Positions 4,440-39,317 of a stretch of DNA of 64,000 nucleotides are shown piece by piece. The DNA is taken from the NCBI RefSeq assembly GCF_006345805.1, contig NC_042997.1, positions 81,344,001 to 81,408,000 of the forward strand. The letters run 5' to 3'. The translations under genes were made by a program, and so were the position numbers. Under the pieces are notes generated by a model, which ran no database searches, was not told the DNA's origin, and saw only the letters and a program-made list of their open reading frames with translations. Position 1 is the stretch's first letter. Every line of letters begins with the position of its first letter. Origin of the DNA: Octopus sinensis. Taxonomy: Eukaryota.

Positions 4440-6200
4440 TTAAAAATTGCACAAAGCTTTTATAACAAAGCATTTATAACGACCCAATAAATATGTGTAT
4501 ATATAGATACACAAACATACACATGCACACATACATTATATACATAATATATAAATATAAACACAGATAACTTGAGGAATTGACCATGAGATTTGTTAAT
4601 TGAAATACCAAAACTTAGTTTGACTGGAAACTGAAGCATCTTAAATTCAAATGGAACATCTGTAGGTATGAGTGGAATTTTTGGAATGAAATCGTTTTCT
4701 CTTTTGTGACTATCTGTTATGATTGTTGCCTGAAGGACACAGGGCTTCATGGAAGTAACAATTAAGCGAGTTCCATTACGCAGGTGAGATGGGTCAAGAT
4801 TCTTAATCAATATAATGGGAGCACCCAGTTTTAGTGTCAAGTTATGCAGTGGCATCTCAGTGGGTTTAAGTGTGTTCAGAAATTCAACAACCTGATCTTG
4901 ATTGATTATCGTCAATTGATCAAAAAGTCATTTGTGATGTATCTCTTAAGTTTTGAAGAAGTTCATGACTGAGTTTATCGACCATTTCATTAGTTGGAGC
5001 TGGTATAGCTCTTTCACATAGCCAGTTTACATCAGTGTAATTGACAGATAAATTAGGAAATACTTTATCCATAAGATCCCTAAGTATCATTTGACTGCAT
5101 GTAATTTCATGTGGCTGAAGTCTTGAGTTGAATGTTAATATCCCATTACCAATCTCAAGAAGCTCTGATGTTATTTGTAAGATGAAGTTTTTTCACGTCT
5201 CCAAAGGTATGGTTTTTTGAAGCATGCATTGACTTCACCAGCTTTTGATCCTTTGGGGATAACTGGCAACATTTGAAAATCTCCTGCAAGAAGAACTGTT
5301 ACTCCTCCCATGAATGTGCTATTGTTTTTTATGTCTTGGAGGGTATGGTCAAGTACCTCTGGAGCTCTACAATGTAACAGGGCACTCATCCCAAACAGTG
5401 AGGCAAGTTTATTGGAGAACTGTTGCTATTGCAGAGTTTTGGGAAATGTTGTTGCACATTTGAGATTCTTTCATTGAAAGGTTTAGAGGGAGCTTGAACA
5501 TGGAATGAGCAGTTCTTCCCCCATTGAGTGGGGTAGCTGCAATACCAGAAGATGCAACACTGGAAGAAGGTTAGATTTTATTTCCTTCCATTTAGGATTG
5601 CAGGTGAAAGTAACAAAAAGATCTGATTTTCCATATGTCCTGACATATGTTGTAGCATCTTGTGTTTGTTTGTGCATATATCAAGGACCACCTGTGAATG
5701 ATGATGGGAGGATTATACATTGCCCCATGTTTTGAATATCACCATCTGTCCTCAGAGCATTTTGGAGAAGAACAATTTTTAGCCCTTAACTTTTTTTGAT
5801 TATTATAAATGTAGAAGAGATGCTGACTCTCAACTTTAGCATAGATATAAACAGGGTATTGCTGAAATAGATCACAATACATGTGTAATTGATTTGTTCT
5901 GGTCTTAACATCAGTTGGTAAGAACAGAAGTCATTTGACGAGACCTTTTTGTTTGTAATTGACTCTCCTGTTACAGGTTCAATCTGTGGAATATTGAAAT
6001 GATACCCATCTTGTCCATTTCTCAAAATGAGAGGATACTGGAGAGTATCATAAGAGGGATGAGTTTCTGAAACATCAGAATTTTCATGGGGATCATCCAC
6101 CATAAGGATGGCTACTCCATTAGATGTGGGCTCATTAAAATGGCGTAAAATGTCCTTTACTATAGATGTAACAAACACAGAAACACACACACACTCAGAG
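4440..6200 (-). mobile_element. Helitron Rep/PIF1-helicase relic with internal deletions
   Basis: YDTLQYPLILRNGQDGYH, KSDLFVTFTCNPKWKEIKSNL (Rep), FMGGVTVLLAGDFQMLPVIPKG, HNLTLKLGAPIILIKNLDP..NGTRL and QFPVKLSFGISINKSHGQ (PIF1 helicase). Confidence 0.9.
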
Positions 6201-23119: not shown

Positions 23120-23340
23120 GCCAACAAGGGGCTAAACATAGAGAAGACAAACAAGGACAGACAAAGGGATTAAGTCAATTAGATCAACCCCAGTATGTCA
23201 CTGGTACTTATTTAATTGACTCCAAAAGGATGAAAGGCAAAGTTGACCTCAGCAGAATTTGAACTCAGAACATAGTGGCAGACGAAACACCACTAAGCAT
23301 TTCGCCCAGCATGCTAACATTTCTGCCAGTTCGCTGCCTT
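23120..23340 (-). mobile_element. tRNA-derived SINE (family B)
   Basis: aaaggatgaaaggcaaagttgacctcagcagaatttgaactcagaac..gcatttcgcccagcatgctaac. Confidence 0.75.
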
Positions 23341-24209
23341 ATATATAAAGAAAATACTGTATGGTGCCTTATAGTTAAAAATCATAGCTGCACAAATAAC
23401 AACAACATCAATAACATGATCAATGAACCAACATGGGAAACTTTATATCACTGAGCCTGCTAGAAACAGAAGCCAAATCTCTCTTAAATCATAGTAAGTC
23501 ACTGGATAATGTAGTCCTGGATATACCATGTCTGAAACAAAGATCTGATGATCACTGTTGAAACAAATTTGATCTTATTGCCTATGGAACTAAGCATCAT
23601 CATCAAGAATAGTGACAAGATGAGGCATTCAGCTCGGCCATTGGAAGACAGAATTAATGGTTAATTTTTATTTCCAGAAATTTGGATAAGCTTGAGCTCA
23701 ATATTAGCAACATGGGGATCTTCTTGCCATTAAATTATGTATAATAGATAATTAGATGAACATAACTGCTCTGTTACTTCTGAAGCTTATCACCTCTCAA
23801 CTTCTCTCCACCCATTCATAAGCATAATTTATGTCACTGATGCCATTGCCATCAGTACTCCTCTCTTTCTCTCTAAATCTATTTCTTTATACTTCTCTCT
23901 CTCTCTCTCTACCAAAGAGAAACAAAGAAAGATTAACATGTCTGAAAAAGGACAAACCCCCACCATCCCAAGCAATCTGGCATTACATGAATATCTTTTC
24001 AAATCTTTCTTTTACCCACATTACCATATGTATGCATGTGTTAGTGTGTGTATGAGTGAAATTTTTTCTCCTCTTACCAGCATTCTTTTTATTTTAATAT
24101 CTTTTGTCTCCCTTTACTTTACTCTTTTTCTCTCCCTTCATTGTTTCCCCTCTTTCTTCTGTCTCCCTTCCTACTACTACTACAGAATAGAAAAGATACG
24201 TACATACAT

Positions 24210-24300
<91 letters not shown>

Positions 24301-24309
24301 TATATATAA

Positions 24310-25733
24310 ATAGATGAGTGTATTTTACCTTGTTAACATTTAACACGGATAAATCAATGAATAGTTACCAGGACAGCAAAAATCTCACAAGTAAAGATGT
24401 TGTAACTCCTTGTTTATAAAGGTTGAAACTTCGTGTTTACGTTGAATATTTGAATAATAGGAATAAAAAATGGAGTTAACGCAGGTTTAAACAAGTATTT
24501 TTTCTTTCTACATATGTTTCAAAAATTCCACTGATACTTATTCAAAAGAATAAAAGGTATAAACAATGCAATCTTCTCTTCGGGAAAGGGAAAAAACGAA
24601 ACTTGTCAATACGACATTTTAGCAAAAAATGATGGATTCGTATAGCGATAGACAGAACGCTATTAATATTGTTTAAAAAAACGTTATATGATATAACGTC
24701 ATAAGTAGCTAACAGAAAGAGTAGGGATATTAATAGTGAATGTTAAATATAAAGGAAATTAAAGTCTAAACTATATATAATGATAGAGACTACTTATATG
24801 CACTAAAAGTATGTTTTTGCCAATGCTTACATCTGTATGCTCGTTCTATAACCGTGTTTACTAGAGTATTTTTAGAAAAAATAATGAAAAATAGCTCAGA
24901 ATTGCAGAGAAGACAGAATTTCTTGCCTTTGTCATATGGTATCGAAATTGAGAGGATCAACCATTCCAAATGAAATTGTTCATTGTGGTCTTTTAAATTC
25001 CAAATCAGTTTGCTGAGACCGGTACTATTCCGTTTATTTCTATCCCTAAATGTTGAGTAATGGATAGAAATTCTCTTAGATAACTCTAACGATGTGCTTC
25101 CAATGTAAAATTGTACTTTATTACGAGTACTGATTATACACTGGTATATAGAATTTTTAATCTTAGAGTTACTTGACATAAATTTAATTCTATTGGGATT
25201 GACTTCAGATACAATAACCTTGTTATTAATATTTCTAGAGGGTTGGATGGTAGTAGCTAAATTAATGTTAGTATTAGTAAATGTATTAATATTTAACAGT
25301 TTGTTATTATGAGAAGATATAATTTGCAAGAGATTTTTTGTGTTTGAAAAACCTATCCTAACTTTATGTGAATTAATTATAGAGTAATATCTAGAATTAT
25401 TTGGAAAATTCCTAGCAATAGCTTGACGAAACAGCAGTGGGAGATTAGATTTAATTTGTCTCCCGTAAGGAATTATTAACCAAATATTTTTACATTAGCA
25501 GATAATTTAGATAATCTAAATGAAATATTCTTAACTAAATTCTTAGTAATTGCTCCAGGATGATTACTAAATTTGCTAATGTACTTAAGATTGGTCAACG
25601 GTTTATGATATGGGAAGTAAGAATCACTGTGTAAATTAAGCGTAATATCTAAAAAGTTGGCCTTCGTCAGATCGTCATCAAAAACGATTTTTAAGCCCAT
25701 TCTACTGAAAAAATTAACTAAACTGTTCAAATA
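24310..25733 (-). mobile_element. Penelope-like element, left arm: RT thumb fragment, linker, GIY-YIG endonuclease and 3' tail; 5'-truncated
   Basis: RT piece FDDDLTKANFLDITLNL..PYHKP..YISKFSNHP..KNISFRLSKLS (25494-25733). Linker KNIWLIIPY..NFP..IISSHNNKLL and EN IYQC..FYIGST..KRISIHYSTF..TGLSKLIWNLK..WLIL..CLLCNSE..CKH (open frame ~25490 to 24790). The tail ends at a (TA)n tract. Confidence 0.9.
24790..25329 (-). CDS. PLE GIY-YIG endonuclease domain (C-terminal part of the PLE ORF, uninterrupted)
   Basis: 179-aa ORF with IY..YIG, R, H and Cys motifs typical of PLE endonucleases. The frame stays open upstream to ~25490. Confidence 0.85.
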   Translation of the reverse strand: MQIISSHNNKLLNINTFTNTNINLATTIQPSRNINNKVIVSEVNPNRIKFMSSNSKIKNSIYQCIISTRNKVQFYIGSTSLELSKRISIHYSTFRDRNKRNSTGLSKLIWNLKDHNEQFHLEWLILSISIPYDKGKKFCLLCNSELFFIIFSKNTLVNTVIERAYRCKHWQKHTFSAYK

Positions 25734-26381
25734 AAATGTATATGGATGAATAATAAATTGAAAGAAGAGAAAGAACTTGTACTATATCCCAATAAAAATG
25801 GTAGAGTGTCTGATTTATTAGAAGAAGCTAAAAAACAAGTTGAATACTCAGAAGATGGATCAAAACGATTACGATTATTAGAAATCATCAGTTACAAAAT
25901 CCACTCAATTCAAAAGGAAGATACTTTATTAGAAAATCTCACGAATACATCTGCTACAGCAAAGACTTATCGTGTAGAAGAGACTCCAAAAGATGAAGTA
26001 ACCCTAGCTGAAGATGAGATGATCATCCCAGTTGCCCATTTTCACAAGGATCTCTTCTGTACATTTGGAACACCATTTCTTTTGAAAGTAAAACATAATG
26101 AGCCATTTTCTACTGTTAAAGAACGAATACAGAAAAAGTTAGATGTTGTTGACAAAGAATTTGAGAAGTATAAATTTGCTGTTGTGATCATGGGACGCCA
26201 GGATTACATCACTGATGATGGAGATTCAGACTTTCAGTTAAACTTGAGTAAATTTTTACCGCATCAAACATCAGGAGGAGGATTACAGACTCGGCCTTGG
26301 CTAGGTTTGGATCATGTAAACAAAACACCTAAAAGATCCCGTTACAATTATTTGGAGAAGGCAATTAAAATTCACAATTAA
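25734..26381 (+). pseudogene. USP7: Intronless 5'-truncated copy of USP7 (HAUSP): Ubl4-Ubl5 plus C-terminal activating tail; reading frame intact, ATG at 25746 gives 211 aa
   Basis: KCIWMN..LYPNKNG.V.DLLEEAKK..RLRLLEIISYKI, VAHFHK..FGTPFLL, EFEKYKFAVV.MGR and [29 protein letters not shown] match my recollection of the human USP7 C-terminus (..[27 protein letters not shown]). No splice acceptor precedes it and it abuts PLE sequence directly. Confidence 0.93.
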
Positions 26382-27590
26382 CTGTCAATAATTCCAAGAT
26401 AGTGGCTAATGAGGAAAAAGTAAGATATGCCAAAAGCAGCAGCAGCAGCAACAACAAGAGCTGTTCATATGCAGTCATCATTGCTGTTGGTGGTCAGCTT
26501 AATAAAGTGCTGGCAACAGCAAATTGTTGACATAGAAATGTTGGCTTGTTCTGCCAGTGGCACTTAGCTGTCTGTCCATGTGTGTGTTTGCCAGCCCTGC
26601 CACATCTCCTGCAATATTTCTGCTCTCTTCCTACATCCAATCTGCCTCTTCATCTTTTCTTCTTTTACCTTTTGTCTATACTTTTATTTTAAAAACTATT
26701 GATGACAGAGAGCGTGTAGATGTGAGCTATTTATATAAGGGTGACTTCATTGTTCTGACAGTGGAAACTGCAGCTGGCATTAACATCTTTAATCTCTCCC
26801 TTCTCTTTTTCTTCCCCATATCTGAAGCATTATGGCTATCACAGCTTGCTGCTTGTCCTAAACATAGTTACCAAGATTGTAACAACTTTATTTCTCTGTG
26901 GATATACCAAAAAGATAACTGAAAATAAATATCTAAGCCACAGTAAATACAACTGTTACCACCACTACAATCACATTGATTGCTGTTATTCACTGTCAAA
27001 AAAAAGGTACACACCACACACACACACACACACAAACATGCATACATGTAAAGGTTTTTAACATACATCTATATTGAGAAAAAAAGCACAAATATTGTTA
27101 TGTACACAATTTACATCCACACATATGAAACAAGTCTTTTGTTCATAAAAATCTGCAAAAATACACTGAAATTGTAATTGCTCTTTGCATACAGAAAAAG
27201 AAGACACACATCGTTTTAAATATATTTTTTTAAAGATCTTAAGGCAATTGATGTGTTTTACACATTGTAGTTTGTCTACTTTCTTGCTCTTGTATATTGC
27301 CTCTTGTCTACTATTCTCTACCGTCCACCAACACATTCTAGATCAATTTCTCCTTTCATCTATTTAGTTGTACTCTTTGGTGGTGATGGTGATGATGGCA
27401 CATCTTTTAGCTGTCTCACATTTTTTCAAATTTACTGAAAACATTAATAGCAATAGGAAAACCGTACACCAATTTGGTTCTTGAGCAACTTCTGAAGACA
27501 GCTAGCTTTGTGTAGGACTAGTGACCAGTCATTTCAATTGGCACTGACAATTTGCTGTACTTTAGTCCCCCCTCTCTTGTAAAACCCTCA
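26382..27590 (+). other. Presumed USP7 3' UTR carried with the retrocopy
   Basis: Unique non-coding sequence running from the USP7 stop to the second PLE arm. No poly(A) at the junction. Identity as UTR is inferred. Confidence 0.55.
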
Positions 27591-28683
27591 CTAAAACCGA
27601 TCTAAAAGTAAATATAACACCTTCAAAAGTAATTACGCTATGAATACTAGTAAAAATATTTGGTTAATAATTCTTTACGGGAGACAAATTAAATCTAATC
27701 TCCCACTGCTGTTTCGTCAAGCTATTGCTAGGAATTTTCCAAATAATTCTAGATATTACTCTATAATTAATTCACTAAAGTTAGGATAGGTTTTTCAACA
27801 CAAAAAATCTCTTGCAAATTATATCTTCTCATAATACAAACTGTTAAATATTAATACATTTACTAATACTAACATTAATTTAGCTACTACCATCCAACCC
27901 TCTAGAAATATTAATAACAAGGTTATTGTATCTGAAGTCAATCCCAATAGAATTAAATTTATGTCAAGTAACTCTAAGATTAAAAATTCTATATACCAGT
28001 GTATAATCAGTACTCGTAATAAAGTACAATTTTACATTGGAAGCACATCGTTAGAGTTATCTAAGAGAATTTCTATCCATTACTCAACATTTAGGGATAG
28101 AAATAAACGGAATAGTACCGGTCTCAGCAAACTGATTTGGAATTTAAAAGACCACAATGAACAATTTCATTTGGAATGGTTGATCCTCTCAATTCGATAC
28201 CATATGACAAGGCAAGAAATTCTGTCTTCTCTGCAATTCTGAGCTATTTTTTCATTTTTTTTCTAAAATACTCTAGTAAACACGGTTATAGAACGAGCAT
28301 ACAGATGTAAGCATTGGCAAAAACATACTTTTAGTGCATATAAGTAGTCTCTATCATTATATATAGTTTAGACTTTAATTTCCTTTATATTTAACATTCA
28401 CTATTAATATCCCTACTCTTTCTGTTAGCTACTTATGACGTTATATCATATAACGTTTTTTTAAACAAATTAATAGCGTTCTGTCTATCGCTATACGAAT
28501 CCATCATTTTTTGCTAAAATGTCGTATTGACAAGTTTCGTTTTTTCCCTTTCCCGAAGAGAAGATTGCATTGTTTATACCTTTTATTCTTTGAATAAGTA
28601 TCAGTGGAATTTTTGAAACAACATTGTAGAAAGAAAAAATACTTGTTTAAATAACCTGCGTTAACTCCATTTTTTATTCCTAT
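27590..28683 (+). mobile_element. Penelope-like element, right arm: linker, GIY-YIG endonuclease and tail; inverted copy of the left arm
   Basis: 27650-28683 is the reverse complement of 24457-25493. Over the ~600 bp I aligned base by base there is one substitution and several 1-bp deletions. It ends at (TA)n. Confidence 0.9.
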
Positions 28684-28999
28684 ATATATATATATATTAT
28701 TATATATTATATACATATATATACACACATACAAACGCATATCTGTGTGTTTTATAAATATATATAGGTATAAAATATTCAGGCAGGTACTGAACTTATG
28801 ATCTGGGTTCTGGCTAACCACATCAAGTTGTAAGGAGCACTTAAGATTGCTTAAGGTGGCAATCCCACTGTAATTCAGCTGATGGGTAAATCTTGGGTTT
28901 GCTTCATTGGATTACAAATATTTTACTGGGTGTGTATCCAAGATAGTTACAATAAATATGGAGAGTAGTACATCTGTATATTTTCTATTTCTATTTCAA

Positions 29000-29450
29000 T
29001 TATACAGCATAAGTGGTTGAATTTCTCTGTATGTTTCTGTTTCATAGAAAACTAGCAACTGCACTTGCATCCAGCTACTTTTGACTTGTTACCAGTCTAT
29101 GCAACTTTATTCAAGGTCCATCCACTACCAAGTGTTTGTAGGCTTGGCTAACATTATTTTTCTAGATTACTCTAGTTTTTGAGTTTATCCTGGACAGGTA
29201 ATGCCCTCTTCCTTACCTACTGTAGCATCACCAGGCCAGAGCTTTTGAAAATCATACATAATGCCCAACCTGAAAGTCTTCTGAAAGAGACAACTCTTGC
29301 TGTCCTCAGAATAATTCTCAGGCCATCATTGCTCATATACTCCAATATATCTCTTACAGAATTTGAGAGTTGATGTTCCATTGATTGCATGGTTTTTTCC
29401 ACTTATTCAACTGGTAGGTTATAGTGATCTTAATTGTGACATGCTGACTT
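29000..29450 (-). mobile_element. Highly degenerate LINE (RTE-like) C-terminal relic
   Basis: RDILEYMSNDGLRIILRTARVVSFRRLSGWALCMI weakly resembles the RRLRWAGHV.RM region. Confidence 0.3.
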
Positions 29451-29791: not shown

Positions 29792-30182
29792 TTCTATTTA
29801 GGCACAAAGCCTGAACATTTGTGAAATTACATTGACTCTAGGGCTCAAAAGAATAAAAGGCAAAGTTGCCCTCGGCAGAATTTGAACACAGAATGTGAAG
29901 ACAGACAGAATGCTGCTAAGCATTTTGTCCAACATACTAATGATTCTGCCAGTTTGCCACCATAATAATGATGATTTCAAATTTTTGCCACAAGAACAGC
30001 TTGTGGGAGGGAATTAAGTCGATTATATTAACCCCAGTGTGTAACTGGTACTTATTAAATCAACCCCAAAAAGATGAAAGGCAAAGTCAACCTCAGTGGA
30101 ATTTGAACTCAAAACATAGCGATGGGTGAAATACTGCTAAGCATTTCGCCCAGCATACTAATGATTCTGCTAGCTCATTGCC

Positions 30183-30261
<79 letters not shown>

Positions 30262-30620
30262 TGATGATAATGGTTTCAAATTTTGGTACAAGACCAGCAA
30301 TTTAGAGGAAGGGGAAAGTCAATTACATTAACCCCAGTACTTGACTAGTATTCTATTTTGTTGATTCCAAAAGGATGAAAGGCAAAATCAACCTTAGTGG
30401 AATTTGAACTCTGAACATAAAGAGCTAGAAAAAATTCTGCCGAGCATTTTGTCTACCATGCTAACAGTTTTGATAGCTTACCAACTTGATGATGATAGTG
30501 GATAGTAATCCTTTCTAATTTTGGCATATAGCCAGCAATGTTTGGGGGAGGGGCAAGTGAATTACATCAACTCTAGTGTTTGACTTGTACTTTATTTTGC
30601 CAACCCTGAAAGGCAAAGTT
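29560..30620 (-). mobile_element. Cluster of family B SINE copies separated by (AAT)n tails
   Basis: Repeated aaaggcaaagt..gaatttgaac..gctaagcatt blocks at ~29.65, 29.85, 30.07, 30.37 and 30.6 kb. Confidence 0.75.
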
Positions 30621-35824: not shown

Positions 35825-36108
35825 GTTTATGCATATATATATATTATGTATAAATATATATAGATATGTGTATGTATGTATATATATATATATATTTGTA
35901 TGTATTTATATTATATATGTATATTATGTATATGTATATATATATATGTATTATGTGTATATATACAATGTATATGTATGTATATATTATATGTATATAT
36001 ATTAACTATTAATATATATATATACATATATATGTATATTATGTGTATATATATTATGTGTGTGTATATATATATATATATATTATGTGTATATATGTAT
36101 ATATATAT

Positions 36109-36155
<47 letters not shown>

Positions 36156-36237
36156 GGATAAATGTAAAAAAACACAAACTGGGACAAGAATGCAAAACAT
36201 TTAGAAGACGATACAAAAAAACGGACGGGACATTCAA

Positions 36238-36308
36238 AGCCTTCGATCTTCAGTCAAAAACCGGATCATCTTCGCAATTTCAGCTGATTAATTTTGAGAT
36301 TGCTCCAA
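36238..36308 (-). ncRNA. Putative non-circularly permuted hammerhead (family 2, copy A)
   Basis: Minus strand reads ttgga-gcaATC^tcaaaa-ttaatc-agct-GAAA-ttgc-gaagatga-tccgg-t-ttttga-CTGAAGA-tcgaa-ggct. Confidence 0.6.
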
Positions 36309-36935
36309 CCTGGCCAGCCCCAAAGGAAAATCTAAGCCAAGCGCATTAGATTCCTTGGTAGAAAGCCTCGAATGTATGCAAAACAAGGATGGGAACGAAT
36401 AAGAATACAAAAATACATAAAAATAATAATGATAACACGAATAAGAATACGAAAATACGTAAAAACAATAAAGATAATAATAATAATAACAAAAACAAGA
36501 CGTTACAGACAGGTGTCTTTTCAACAGGATGGGTGAACTTGAGCTGGCGCATTGAAAAATTGCCTAAAGGCGAAGAGAGAAATAAAATGTGTGTCTGGCC
36601 TATACGGCTGTTGATCACGAAAAGGCAGGACAGCAGTCCAAAGTTAGCGGGACAGAGGAAGAGAGAAAAAAGGGAACAAGGAACAAAGGAGGAGGAGGAG
36701 AAAGAGAGAGAGAGAGAAAGAGACGGGTCAAAGTGGGGTGCAAAGTGTGAAAGGCAGAGAAATGTAGGAGAGGGGGATAGAGAGAGACAGTGTTGTAGAG
36801 TCATACCATGTATTAGAGAAAAAATGTATTTCACACACAATATCAAAAAGGGGGTACGGGCGCCGCCATATAAAGGATAAATGTAAAAAAACACAAACTG
36901 GGACAAGAACGCAAAACATTTAGAAGACGATACAA

Positions 36936-37006
36936 AGCCTTCGATCTTCAGTCAAAAACCGGATCATCTTCGCAATTTCGGCTGATTAATTTTGAGATTG
37001 CTCCGA
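36936..37006 (-). ncRNA. Putative non-circularly permuted hammerhead (family 2, copy B)
   Basis: As copy A but with agcc-GAAA (canonical G10.1-C11.1) and tcgga/tccgg. Confidence 0.6.
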
Positions 37007-37066
37007 CCTGGTCAGCCCCAAAGGAAAATCTAAGCCAAACGCATTAGATTCCTTGGAAGAAAGCCT

Positions 37067-37450
37067 GGAGGCGCAATGGCCCAGTGGTTAGAGCAGCGAA
37101 CTCGCAGTCGTAGGATCGCAGTTTCGATTCCCAGTCCAGGCATTGTGTGTGTTTATTGATCGGAAACACCTAAAGCTCCACGAGGCTCCGGCAGGGGATG
37201 ATGGCGAACCCTGCTGTACTCTTTCACCACAACTTTCTCTCACTCTGTCTTCCTGTTTCTGTTGTACCTGTGTTTCAAAGGGCCAGCCTTGTCACAGTCT
37301 GTGTCACGCTGAATCTCCCCTGAGAACTACGTTAAAGGTACACATGTCTGTGGAGTACTCAGCTACTTGCACATTAATTTCACGAGCAGGCTGTTCTGTT
37401 CATCGGATCAACCAGATCCCTCGTCATCGTAACCAACGGAGTGCCAACCA
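37067..37450 (+). mobile_element. tRNA-derived SINE; duplicate at 38728-39112
   Basis: ggaggcgcaatggcccagtggttagag (A box) and gtttcgattcc (B box), ~380-bp body. Confidence 0.85.
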
Positions 37451-37747
37451 ACATATATATATATATTTGTATGTATTTATATTATATATGTATATTATGT
37501 GTATATATGTATATATATATATATATATTTGTATGTATTTATATTATATATGTATATTATGTATATGTATATATATATATGTATTATGTGTATATATACA
37601 ATGTATATGTATGTATATATTATATGTATATATATATTAACTATTAATATATATATATACATATATATATGTATATTATGTGTATATATATTATGTGTGT
37701 GTATATATATATATATATATTATGTGTATATATGTATATATATATTA

Positions 37748-37796
<49 letters not shown>

Positions 37797-37878
37797 GGAT
37801 AAATGTAAAAAAACACAAACTGGGACAAGAATGCAAAACATTTAGAAGACGATACAAAAAAACGGACGGGACATTCAA

Positions 37879-37949
37879 AGCCTTCGATCTTCAGTCAAAA
37901 ACCGGATCATCTTCGCAATTTCAGCTGATTAATTTTGAGATTGCTCCAA
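37879..37949 (-). ncRNA. Putative permuted hammerhead (family 2, copy A')
   Basis: Duplicate of 36238-36308. Confidence 0.6.
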
Positions 37950-38597
37950 CCTGGCCAGCCCCAAAGGAAAATCTAAGCCAAGCGCATTAGATTCCTTGGT
38001 AGAAAGCCTCGAATGTATGCAAAACAAGGATGGGAACGAATAAGAATACAAAAATACGTAAAAATAATAATGATAACACGAATAAGAATACGAAAATACG
38101 TAAAAACAATAAAGATAATAATAATAATAACAAAAACAAGACGTTACAGACAGGTGTCTTTTCAACAGGATGGGTGAACTTGAGCTGGCGCATTGAAAAA
38201 TTGCCTAAAGGCGAAGAGAGAAATAAAATGTGTGTCTGGCCTATACGGCTGTTGATCACGAAAAGGCAGGACAGCAGTCCAAAGTTAGCGGGACAGAGGA
38301 AGAGAGAAAAAAGGGAACAAGGAACAAAGGAGGAGGAGGAGAAAGAGAGAGAGAGAGAAAGAGACGGGTCAAAGTGGGGTGCAAAGTGTGAAAGGCAGAG
38401 AAATGTAGGAGAGGGGGATAGAGAGAGACAGTGTTGTAGAGTCATACCATGTATTAGAGAAAAAATGTATTTCACACACAATATCAAAAAGGGGGTACGG
38501 GCGCCGCCATATAAAGGATAAATGTAAAAAAACACAAACTGGGACAAGAACGCAAAACATTTAGAAGACGATACAAAAAAACGGACGGGACATTCAA

Positions 38598-38668
38598 AGC
38601 CTTCGATCTTCAGTCAAAAACCGGATCATCTTCGCAATTTCGGCTGATTAATTTTGAGATTGCTCCGA
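38598..38668 (-). ncRNA. Putative permuted hammerhead (family 2, copy B')
   Basis: Duplicate of 36936-37006, without the adjacent 21-bp deletion. Confidence 0.6.
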
Positions 38669-39273
38669 CCTGGTCAGCCCCAAAGGAAAATCTAAGCCAA
38701 ACGCATTAGATTCCTTGGAAGAAAGCCTGGAGGCGCAATGGCCCAGTGGTTAGAGCAGCGAACTCGCAGTCGTAGGATCGCAGTTTCGATTCCCAGTCCA
38801 GGCATTGTGTGTGTTTATTGATCGGAAACACCTAAAGCTCCACGAGGCTCCGGCAGGGGATGATGGCGAACCCTGCTGTACTCTTTCACCACAACTTTCT
38901 CTCACTCTGTCTTCCTGTTTCTGTTGTACCTGTGTTTCAAAGGGCCAGCCTTGTCACAGTCTGTGTCACGCTGAATCTCCCCTGAGAACTACGTTAAAGG
39001 TACACATGTCTGTGGAGTACTCAGCTACTTGCACATTAATTTCACGAGCAGGCTGTTCTGTTCATCGGATCAACCAGATCCCTCGTCATCGTAACCAACG
39101 GAGTGCCAACCAACATATATATATATATATTATGTATATATATATATATTATGTGTATATATATTATGTGTATATATATATATATTATTTGAATATATAT
39201 ATATATATTATGCATATATCTTATGTATATGTATATATACATATATATTATGTATATGTGTTGTGTGTGTGTG

Positions 39274-39317
<44 letters not shown>

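What the first reader, a model, noticed from the sequence alone, without database searches (positions are those of the whole stretch)
24310..28683. Host mRNA (USP7) captured between two inverted Penelope-like element arms
Seen: (TA)n, then a minus-strand PLE (tail, EN, linker, RT thumb), an intronless USP7 3' CDS plus ~1.2 kb presumed UTR, a plus-strand PLE (linker, EN, tail), then (TA)n. Both arms are 5'-truncated, point outward and share ~1.03 kb at near identity. There is no poly(A) or LINE-type TSD. Established: PLEs form inverted structures and their RT is prone to template switching; classic retrogenes are LINE products with poly(A). Inference: both ends of a break in (TA)n primed PLE cDNA synthesis, and one strand jumped from PLE RNA onto USP7 mRNA inside its 3' UTR before joining the other strand. 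This would be a PLE-driven route to retrogene formation, giving a composite with ~1-kb inverted termini that might itself move as a unit. I do not know of this being described for cephalopods.
Basis: partly seen in the sequence, partly recalled or inferred. Interest (0 to 1): 0.88.

Follow-up and report, generated by a model that had tools for sequence, protein, structure and literature searches.

The report
Spliced USP7 fragment inside a Penelope insertion
A very young insertion of a Penelope-like retrotransposon into a (TA)n microsatellite carries 1.87 kb of spliced, tail-less USP7 messenger RNA sequence exactly where its two inverted arms normally meet, which suggests that this class of element can copy host mRNA into the genome.

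Summary
Between two (TA)n tracts lie:
- a minus-strand PLE arm (24313-25728);
- 1,865 nt of USP7 cDNA in sense (25728-27592);
- a 3-nt filler, AAA;
- a plus-strand PLE arm (27596-28687).

The parental USP7 gene is on another chromosome. It splits this stretch into seven exon pieces, with six GT..AG introns removed exactly here. The copy starts inside an exon. It ends inside the terminal exon, with no poly(A) and no nearby poly(A) signal.

The element is a recently active, Hydra-clade-like PLE: a telomerase-like RT with a C-terminal GIY-YIG nuclease. Nearly every copy I examined sits in (TA)n. About half of its insertions have the same layout, a "main" copy ending at ruler position 2863 plus an inverted "partner" ending at 2722, abutting head to head with 1-6 nt of overlap or 1-3 nt of filler. 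This locus has that layout plus USP7 in the seam.

The best reading is a single PLE integration in which the partner-arm cDNA moved from PLE RNA onto USP7 mRNA.

Limits:
- Read-level support for the assembly could not be checked.
- Only one such case was found.
- A genome-wide census was cut short by a data quota.
- The composite has not multiplied.

Capture of intron-containing host genes by PLEs is already known in rotifers. I rate this a new variant of a known kind.

The parts
24204..24312 (.). Left (TA)n microsatellite, the target-site flank
   Evidence: TRF finds period 2, 55.5 copies. The family's 3' ends abut (TA)n in nearly all 29 surveyed loci.
24313..24453 (-). Tail extension of the left ('main') PLE arm, ruler 2723-2863. 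It is absent from the right arm.
   Evidence: Ruler mapping. Main copies at other loci end at ruler 2863 and inverted partners end at 2722.
24454..25493 (-). Left PLE arm, the part shared with the right arm (ruler 1683-2722): 3' UTR, GIY-YIG endonuclease and part of the linker. An intact 234-aa ORF lies at 24790-25494.
   Evidence: 99.8% identical to a genomic copy with an intact 778-aa ORF, with 0 indels. The AF2 model of the ORF (pLDDT 76.6) has T4 EndoII, Hpy188I and I-TevI as best PDB matches.
25492..25493 (-). Site of a private 269-nt internal deletion (ruler 1414-1682) in the left arm, with GT microhomology. The missing segment is coding sequence, not an intron.
   Evidence: Every other scored copy that covers both sides of this point carries the ~270-nt segment. 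The ORF is continuous through it in L047.
25494..25728 (-). Left PLE arm, RT thumb part (ruler 1177-1413). The 5'-truncated head is at 25728.
   Evidence: 100% identical to the ruler over 237 nt.
25728..26381 (+). USP7 retrocopy, coding part: the last ~217 codons plus the stop. It starts 42 nt before the end of a parental exon. Six introns are removed.
   Evidence: Pfam USP7_C2 E=1.6e-57. PDB USP7 E=6e-71. Seven exon pieces on C5 with GT..AG boundaries; the six coding pieces are 100% identical.
26382..27592 (+). USP7 retrocopy, 3' UTR part. It ends inside the parental terminal exon, with no poly(A).
   Evidence: 98.7% identical to C5:134447850-134449172, with 3 substitutions and 12 gap openings. 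The parental sequence continues 'ttctctcttg'.
27593..27595 (+). Three-base filler AAA that matches neither USP7 nor the PLE
   Evidence: Direct comparison of the window with L016 and L047. BLAST limits are 27592 and 27596.
27596..28687 (+). Right ('partner') PLE arm, ruler 1629-2722: linker, GIY-YIG EN (frame broken by indels) and 3' UTR. It ends at the family's internal 3' end.
   Evidence: 98.3% identical to the ruler, with 13 indels. Pfam GIY-YIG E=8.9e-4 on the 27835-28239 ORF.
28681..28723 (.). Right (TA)n microsatellite flank
   Evidence: TRF. The pattern for a '2722 end + (TA)n' occurs 569 times in the genome against 3 for the control.

Best explanation
This is one recent integration of a (TA)n-targeting, Hydra-clade-like Penelope-like element (PLE).

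The family's normal product is a 5'-truncated 'main' copy plus an inverted 5'-truncated 'partner' copy, tails outward, joined head to head. Here the two ends of the cleaved (TA)n each primed reverse transcription of PLE RNA. The left end primed at the RNA's 3' terminus (ruler 2863). The right end primed at an internal A/U-rich site (ruler 2722).

The partner-arm cDNA (the minus strand of the window) left the PLE RNA at ruler 1629 and added three untemplated bases. It then continued on a spliced USP7 mRNA, starting inside the 3' UTR, and copied 1,865 nt up into the coding region. It was then joined to the head of the main-arm cDNA through a 1-nt overlap. The main-arm cDNA itself had skipped 269 nt of its template.

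Shown:
- the spliced origin of the USP7 segment;
- the exact junctions;
- the absence of poly(A);
- the family's target and standard architecture;
- the recency of the insertion.

Inferred:
- that the PLE RT did the copying;
- that it was a single event;
- that the joins were template switches rather than ligations;
- the order of the steps.

The product is a truncated, promoter-less USP7 pseudogene. It has an open 211-codon frame from the ATG at 25746.
For: Spliced origin: seven exon pieces of the single parental gene on C5 are collinear with 25728-27592. The six coding pieces are 100% identical and the terminal-exon piece is 98.7% identical. Six GT..AG introns are removed exactly.

No LINE signature: the 3' end is internal to the terminal exon. 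There is no poly(A). No signal lies within 60 nt upstream, and the first AATAAA is 226 nt downstream.

Seam position: the USP7 segment abuts both truncated PLE heads directly, with a 1-nt overlap on one side and a 3-nt filler on the other. In 11 other inverted pairs of this family the heads meet with 1-6 nt of overlap or 1-3 nt of filler and no spacer.

Same end rule: the left arm ends at ruler 2863 and the right arm at 2722, as in the other pairs.

Pairing is common: 34 of 63 main-type ends on C1-C4 have an outward-facing partner end within 12 kb.

(TA)n targeting.

A jump-prone RT:
- a private 269-nt skip with GT microhomology in the left arm;
- internal rearrangements in L025, L042, L045 and L047;
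- a 180-nt foreign piece at the head of L023.

Active family:
- an intact 778-aa ORF;
- copies 99-100% identical;
- a left arm with only 2 substitutions against the ruler copy, one of them private to the ruler.

PLE identity:
- TERT is the best fold match of a full-length relative, E=4e-8;
- GIY-YIG nucleases are the best fold matches of the window's EN ORF;
- the Hydra-clade motifs are present.

Parental locus: no PLE and no (TA)n nearby.
Against: No raw reads were available, so the assembly at the two junctions is unverified.

The junction signatures (1-nt overlap, 3-nt filler) fit end-joining of separate cDNAs as well as they fit template switching.

Only one such locus is known. None of the 11 other pairs I inspected has a spacer.

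The right half (26499-28690) is oddly rich in 1-nt indels. That could mean local assembly error.

The parental mRNA 3' end is inferred from signals, not from transcripts.
Confidence: 0.68

Rival explanations
1. Same PLE integration event, but the USP7 piece is a separate cDNA that was ligated by end-joining between the two PLE cDNAs at the broken (TA)n, rather than made by an RT template switch.
For: A 1-nt overlap and a 3-nt filler are typical of end-joining as well. Capture of free cDNA at breaks is known from yeast Ty1 work (my own knowledge, not checked here). USP7 orientation does not discriminate, by a symmetry argument.
Against: A free USP7 cDNA that starts inside the 3' UTR needs a primer of its own. 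The nascent PLE cDNA supplies one in the switch model. The same family shows intramolecular skips that are most simply RT jumps.
Confidence: 0.14
2. The template was a single fusion RNA: a USP7 transcript reading into a 5'-truncated PLE that sat in the 3' UTR of some USP7 allele. It was retrotransposed in cis-like fashion through the PLE 3' end and was 5'-truncated within the USP7 CDS.
For: USP7 and the right arm are co-oriented and contiguous, as a read-through transcript would be.
Against: The parental locus in this genome has no PLE and no (TA)n from -9.4 kb to +1.5 kb of the junction, and the family inserts almost only in (TA)n. Only one parental locus exists. The arm ends at the 'partner' end (2722), as expected for an ordinary pair.
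Confidence: 0.07
3. Assembly artefact: the junctions or one arm are mis-joined or poorly polished, and the real locus differs.
For: Inverted PLE structures are known to trouble assemblies (PMC8557442). The right half carries 25 small indels against 0 in the left half.
Against: There are no gaps in the 64-kb window. A spliced cDNA cannot arise from mis-joining genomic reads. The layout obeys the family's end rule and sits between unique flanks. The arms differ in truncation point and end point, so this is not a missed-adapter palindrome.
Confidence: 0.06
4. Two unrelated events: a LINE-made USP7 retrocopy and separate PLE insertions, in either order.
For: LINEs are active in octopus genomes (PMC13282606).
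Against: There is no poly(A), the 3' UTR is incomplete, there is no TSD, and there is no (TA)n or other target DNA between USP7 and either PLE head. Two independent PLE insertions would each need (TA)n at their 3' end and would leave target sequence at their heads.
Confidence: 0.04

Closest known systems
[quoted passage not shown]
   Same: Host gene sequence is framed by Penelope repeats, including an inverted one, and is attributed to the element's enzymes acting on non-element sequence. Microhomology junctions, internal deletions and 'template jumps' are invoked there too.
   Different: There the genes (NRPS, LRR) keep all their introns and are whole. They sit between intact pLTRs with 8-10 bp TSDs and share no internal PLE sequence. 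Here the host piece is spliced and partial. It is joined to internal coding positions of two 5'-truncated arms and sits in (TA)n with no readable TSD.
LINE template-switch chimeras and twin priming: U6-L1 chimeric pseudogenes (PMC4476161), the tripartite chimeric pseudogene of Magnaporthe (PMC2104539), L1 5' inversions (PMC2837659)
   Same: An RT engaged in target-primed synthesis moves to a second cellular RNA, which yields a chimeric retrocopy. Both strands of the target prime synthesis, which yields inverted segments.
   Different: Those are made by APE-type LINE RTs primed on poly(A), and they end in poly(A) with TSDs. The inverted parts are non-overlapping pieces of one RNA. Here a GIY-YIG PLE is involved, both arms copy the same 3' region, there is no poly(A), and the host RNA lies between the arms.
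Standard insertion architecture of EN+ PLEs, and the Hydra clade (Craig et al. 2021, PMC8557442)
   Same: Shared features are 5' truncation, an inverted 5'-truncated copy adjacent to the head, a 'tail' extension at only one end, a (TA)n insertion bias, a short (<3 kb) single-ORF element, a DKT motif, no CCHH inside GIY-YIG, and CxxC/CxH around the conserved E and N.
   Different: The tail extension is 141 nt rather than 30-40 nt. This octopus family lacks the CxCX5C linker cysteines and shows no hammerhead ribozyme. The seam contains host cDNA.

Membership tests
Penelope-like elements (EN+) | Reverse transcriptase of the PLE/TERT-related type | tested here: met
   The family profile hits a retron RT over motifs A-C (E=0.0035). 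The conserved FDIxxFYPSI, MGSxDGA and YRDD motifs are present. The AF2 model of a full-length relative (34% identical to the octopus ORF; pLDDT 85.6) has TERT structures as its five best PDB matches (E=4e-8 to 2e-7), ahead of retron, LINE-1 and R2 RTs. Pfam RVT_1 itself is only marginal (1 of 28 members).
Penelope-like elements (EN+) | GIY-YIG endonuclease fused to the RT (C-terminal in canonical and Hydra clades) | tested here: met
   'IY...FYIGST...R..H' lies at the C-terminus of the 778-aa ORF. Pfam GIY-YIG E=8.9e-4 on the right-arm ORF and in 5 of 28 relatives, all below the gathering score. The fold of the window's own EN ORF matches T4 EndoII, Hpy188I and I-TevI as the top three distinct hits, each individually weak (E 0.14-0.27).
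Penelope-like elements (EN+) | Insertion architecture: 5' truncation, partial tandems (pLTR), an inverted 5'-truncated copy at the head, a one-sided tail | tested here: met
   tandems are seen in L022, L023 and L047. Inverted partners are seen at about 12 of 29 loci and at 34 of 63 ends. The tail (ruler 2723-2863) is on the main copy only.
Penelope-like elements (EN+) | Hammerhead ribozyme motif in the repeat | tested here: not met
   Rfam finds no match at E<=0.1 in L047 or L001, and none at gathering score in the window. There is no CUGANGA..GAAA core inside the unit. HHRs are also absent from Naiad and most Chlamys PLEs (PMC8557442), so this does not exclude PLE membership.
Hydra clade of PLEs (Craig et al. 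2021) | Short single-ORF element; RW(K) and DKT motifs; no CCHH between GIY and YIG; CxxC and CxH flanking the conserved E and N; (TA)n target | tested here: met
   The unit is 2,863 nt with a 778-aa ORF. The motifs 'RIRW', 'SDKT', 'CLLCNSE...N...CKH' are present, and there is no Cys between IY and YIG. (TA)n lies at nearly all ends. No phylogeny with named Hydra references was made, so placement rests on motifs.
Hydra clade of PLEs (Craig et al. 2021) | CxCX5C linker motif upstream of the EN, and a canonical HHR | tested here: not met
   All 27 relatives, including one from Argonauta, keep C-x-C-x5-C, but the octopus family has no cysteines there. No HHR was found. It is best called Hydra-like, a derived lineage.
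Processed (mRNA-derived) retrocopy | Introns of the parental gene precisely absent; parental gene elsewhere | tested here: met
   Six GT..AG introns are removed. The parent is on C5 and the copy is on C1.
Classical LINE-mediated processed pseudogene | 3' poly(A) tail at the mRNA's polyadenylation site, and flanking TSDs | tested here: not met
   There is no poly(A). The end is internal to the terminal exon. The flanks are PLE arms, not target DNA.

The most novel reading that the evidence does not exclude
Template switching (or cDNA capture) during PLE integration is a recurrent, poly(A)-independent route by which invertebrate genomes acquire processed copies of host mRNAs. The head-to-head seam of PLE inverted pairs would then be a general 'pocket' for captured RNA. 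In addition, this composite would be biologically active, either as a source of a stand-alone USP7 C-terminal fragment or as a ~1-kb-stem hairpin RNA.
Probability: 0.12. Interest if true: 0.8.

Novelty: new variant of a known kind. Interest (0 to 1): 0.62.

Why it matters
How PLEs integrate is unknown. No in vitro system exists, and the origin of their inverted arms and one-sided tail is debated (PMC8557442, PMC3846280).

This locus acts as a natural marker experiment. A foreign, oriented, spliced RNA trapped in the seam shows three things:
- the seam is made from RNA-templated synthesis running inward from the target ends;
- the partner arm's cDNA was the strand that continued onto another RNA;
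- sense, spliced RNA can serve as a template.

The last point contrasts with the intron-retaining captures seen in rotifers, which prompted an antisense-template idea.

It also shows that retrocopies can arise without LINE machinery or poly(A). This matters for retrocopy surveys in genomes rich in PLEs, where pipelines that require poly(A) or TSDs would miss such copies.

Tried and rejected
Intron idea: I first took the ~270 nt missing from the left arm to be a retained-versus-spliced PLE intron. That was rejected because the segment is in-frame coding sequence in intact copies.

Shared variant: I tried using the shared 'C' variant of the two arms as proof of one source RNA. That was rejected because C is the family majority state, 18 of 20.

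Partner-arm fidelity: partner arms looked more divergent than main copies in BLAST identities. A paired count over identical intervals shows equal substitutions (90 vs 90) and only a mild indel excess outside this locus.

USP7 orientation as evidence for the switch model: rejected on a symmetry argument.

Sequence-level family assignment was uninformative. Pfam on the 778-aa ORF gave nothing. phmmer against the PDB gave only noise.

Empty-site or haplotig search with joined flanks found only the locus itself, plus old repeat copies of the right flank.

Exact look-up of the two ORFs in public protein collections found neither.

Other captures:
- L032's head abuts an old dispersed repeat, probably plain flank.
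- L027's 103-nt piece gave no second hit.
- L023 has a 180-nt duplicated local or paralogous piece, unspliced.

I did not try to get those letters another way and used coordinates only.
Full report
OBSERVATION

A (TA)n tract lies at 24204-24312 and another at 28681-28723. Between them two long inverted arms face outward: 24454-25493 matches 28687-27650 at 98.3%. The central ORF at 25722-26381 is the C-terminus of USP7. It matches Pfam USP7_C2 at E=1.6e-57 and aligns with human USP7 residues 894-1102 up to the stop codon. The 64-kb window has no assembly gaps.

THE USP7 SEGMENT IS A PROCESSED, PARTIAL cDNA COPY

The window is G000:C1:81344001-81408000. The only other USP7 locus in the 2.72-Gb genome is on C5.

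Window 25728-27592 is collinear with seven pieces of C5:134440363-134449172. The pieces are separated by six introns, all with GT..AG boundaries, and all removed exactly in the window.

The copy begins 42 nt before the end of a parental exon, so it is 5'-truncated. It ends inside the terminal exon. The parental genomic sequence simply continues ('...ccctcact|ttctctcttg'). No AATAAA or ATTAAA lies within 60 nt upstream, and the first signals are 226-367 nt downstream. There is no poly(A).

The coding part (545 nt) is identical to the parent. The UTR part differs by 3 substitutions and 12 small indels in 1,321 nt. The composite occurs once in the genome.

WHAT THE ARMS ARE

A genome search with the left arm finds many copies 95-100% identical. 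One of them (L047) carries an intact 778-aa ORF in a 2,863-nt unit. I used that copy only as a coordinate ruler.

Pfam does not recognise this protein, so I tested membership in other ways:
- A profile of 28 relatives hits a retron RT across motifs A-C.
- A confident AlphaFold model of a full-length relative (pLDDT 85.6) has telomerase RTs as its best PDB matches, E=4e-8, ahead of retron, LINE-1 and R2 RTs.
- A model of the window's own 234-aa ORF (24790-25494, minus strand) has T4 EndoII, Hpy188I and I-TevI as its top three distinct matches. All three are GIY-YIG nucleases, although each match is weak.

An RT of the TERT-related kind fused to a C-terminal GIY-YIG nuclease defines an EN+ Penelope-like element.

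The motifs fit the Hydra clade of Craig et al. 2021: RW, DKT, no cysteines between GIY and YIG, CxxC-E...N...CxH, a unit under 3 kb, and a (TA)n target. Two features differ. This octopus family has lost the CxCX5C linker cysteines that all 27 relatives keep, and no hammerhead ribozyme is detectable.

EXACT ANATOMY

- Left arm, minus strand: 24313-25493 is ruler 1683-2863 and 25492-25728 is ruler 1177-1413. It lacks 269 nt of coding sequence (ruler 1414-1682), with GT microhomology at the join. No other scored copy has this deletion.
- USP7 runs from 25728 to 27592. Base 25728 is shared with the PLE head.
- Bases 27593-27595 (AAA) match neither sequence.
- Right arm, plus strand: 27596-28687 is ruler 1629-2722.

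The arms are also not symmetrical: the left arm carries a 141-nt tail extension and an internal skip.

THE FAMILY'S NORMAL BEHAVIOUR

In 29 other loci nearly every 3' end abuts (TA)n. There are two alternative 3' ends, at ruler 2863 and at an internal A/T-rich site at 2722.

Where an inverted copy is present (about 12 of 29 loci), the main copy ends at 2863 in all of them and the inverted partner ends at 2722 in most. In 11 of these loci the two heads meet with 1-6 nt of overlap or 1-3 nt of filler, and in none is there a spacer.

Genome-wide, the '2722 end + (TA)n' pattern occurs 569 times (control 3) and the 2863-end pattern 380 times (control 1). By coordinates alone, 34 of 63 main-type ends on C1 to part of C4 have an outward-facing partner end within 12 kb. 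The median span is 325 nt, and this locus, at 4,380 nt, is the largest.

So the window shows the family's standard product, with the correct end on each side and with 1.87 kb of host cDNA in the seam.

MECHANISM

The minus strand of the window reads, 5' to 3': the complement of the right arm, then TTT, then the complement of USP7 from the 3' UTR towards the CDS. That is what a cDNA would look like if it were primed at the right-hand (TA)n on PLE RNA, left that RNA at ruler 1629, added three bases, and continued on USP7 mRNA. The plus strand from the left (TA)n is the cDNA of the main arm.

The two products meet at 25728. I take this as a single integration in which both target ends primed synthesis and the partner-arm cDNA changed template.

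The same family shows other jumps:
- the private 269-nt skip here;
- internal rearrangements in L025, L042, L045 and the inverted copy in L047;
- a 180-nt foreign piece at the head of L023.

One caution: USP7 orientation does not test the model. The opposite orientation would fit a switch from the other arm equally well. It only identifies which arm's cDNA continued.

The junction signatures also cannot separate RT switching from end-joining of separate cDNAs. I prefer switching because it supplies the primer for a cDNA that starts inside a 3' UTR.

RIVALS

- Fusion transcript from a PLE lying in the parental 3' UTR. This is unlikely. The parental locus has no PLE and no (TA)n within -9.4/+1.5 kb, and the family inserts almost only in (TA)n.
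- Two independent events. This is unlikely because there is no poly(A), no TSD, and no target DNA between USP7 and either head.
- Assembly artefact. It cannot create a spliced copy, and the layout follows the family rule. However, I could not inspect reads.

An unexplained feature keeps the artefact option open for details. Window 26499-28690 carries 25 small indels, while 24313-26498 carries none. Under the UTR's rate, the clean 545-nt CDS has a probability of about 0.002. Possible causes are one-sided polishing failure, low-fidelity synthesis of that strand, or (for the UTR part) allelic variation of the parent.

COMPARISON WITH WHAT IS KNOWN

PLE capture of host genes is on record. In Adineta vaga, intron-containing NRPS and LRR genes are framed by pLTRs with TSDs (PMC3846280; also cited in PMC8557442). 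RT template switching that makes chimeric retrocopies, and twin priming that makes inversions, are established for LINEs (PMC4476161, PMC2104539, PMC2837659).

Full-text searches found no report of a spliced host mRNA fragment inside a PLE inverted pair, and none for cephalopods. PLEs are reported as recently active in Octopus vulgaris (PMC13282606).

I therefore rate this a new variant of a known kind.

LIMITS

- It is a single case.
- There is no read-level validation, no empty allele in the assembly, and no transcript data.
- The census of other pairs was stopped by the genome-letter quota.
The best named relative of the PLE protein is from Argonauta hians. From memory, the assembly statistics fit an Octopus chromosome-scale assembly, but I did not verify this.

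Noticed in passing
window 26499-28690 versus 24313-26498: The right half of the composite (USP7 3' UTR part plus right arm) has 25 small indels and about 5 substitutions relative to the parent or the family. The left half (left arm plus USP7 CDS) has 0 indels and 1-2 substitutions. The indel:substitution ratio of about 5:1 is unlike ordinary divergence.
   Followed up: partly
L047:2701-5037 and alignment A1 (linker region, query residues ~620-660): This octopus PLE family lacks the CxCX5C linker cysteines that all 27 relatives keep, including one from Argonauta. Even so, nearly all of its copies sit in (TA)n. This argues against the suggestion that this Zn-finger-like linker is what recognises (TA)n.
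   Followed up: partly
L047 and L001 (Rfam, evalue threshold); window (Rfam, gathering threshold); core-motif scans of L047 and the ruler unit: No hammerhead ribozyme is detectable in this family, although canonical HHRs are reported as universal in the Hydra clade.
   Followed up: partly
G000:C1-C4, coordinates: Most paired insertions of this family are tiny. The median distance between the two outward-facing 3' ends is 325 nt and some are about 100 nt, so both arms are usually cut off after a few dozen to a few hundred bases. The next largest pairs after this locus are C2:17466823-17470425 (3,603 nt) and C1:112548411-112551595 (3,185 nt). Neither was examined.
   Followed up: no
L023 (G000:C8:81277347-81281524) and L064/L066 (G000:C6:68492043-68492951): About 180 nt of non-PLE sequence sits between the flank and a truncated PLE head (ruler 1307). 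It duplicates a stretch ~900 nt upstream, and it is 99.4% identical to a PLE-free paralogous locus on C6. This may be a second, unspliced capture at a head junction.
   Followed up: partly
window 25728 and L035 (G000:C15:2032514-2036695): The left arm's head and the main copy in L035 are truncated at the same ruler position (1177). In this locus the two cDNAs also left the PLE RNA within 54 nt of each other (ruler 1683 and 1629). These may be pause or break hot spots in the RNA.
   Followed up: no
window 35833-39312: A tandem duplication with a period of about 1.6-1.7 kb and 95.7% identity between copies, itself full of (TA)n/(CA)n runs.
   Followed up: no
window 4460-4927 (minus strand): An ORF fragment with a Pif1 helicase 2B domain (Pfam E=2.5e-15). 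It is probably the remnant of a Helitron-type or Pif1-like element.
   Followed up: partly
window 28790-29180; also 23166-23356 and 29832-30419: The unique-looking right flank of the insertion is partly an old dispersed repeat, with genome copies at 70-87% identity. SINE-like direct repeats lie on both sides of the locus.
   Followed up: partly
window 25746-26381: The retrocopy keeps an open 211-codon frame from an ATG. It encodes the last ubiquitin-like domains and the C-terminal tail of USP7. From my own knowledge, that tail activates the catalytic domain in the full protein. No promoter or expression evidence is available, and the exact protein is not in public collections.
   Followed up: partly
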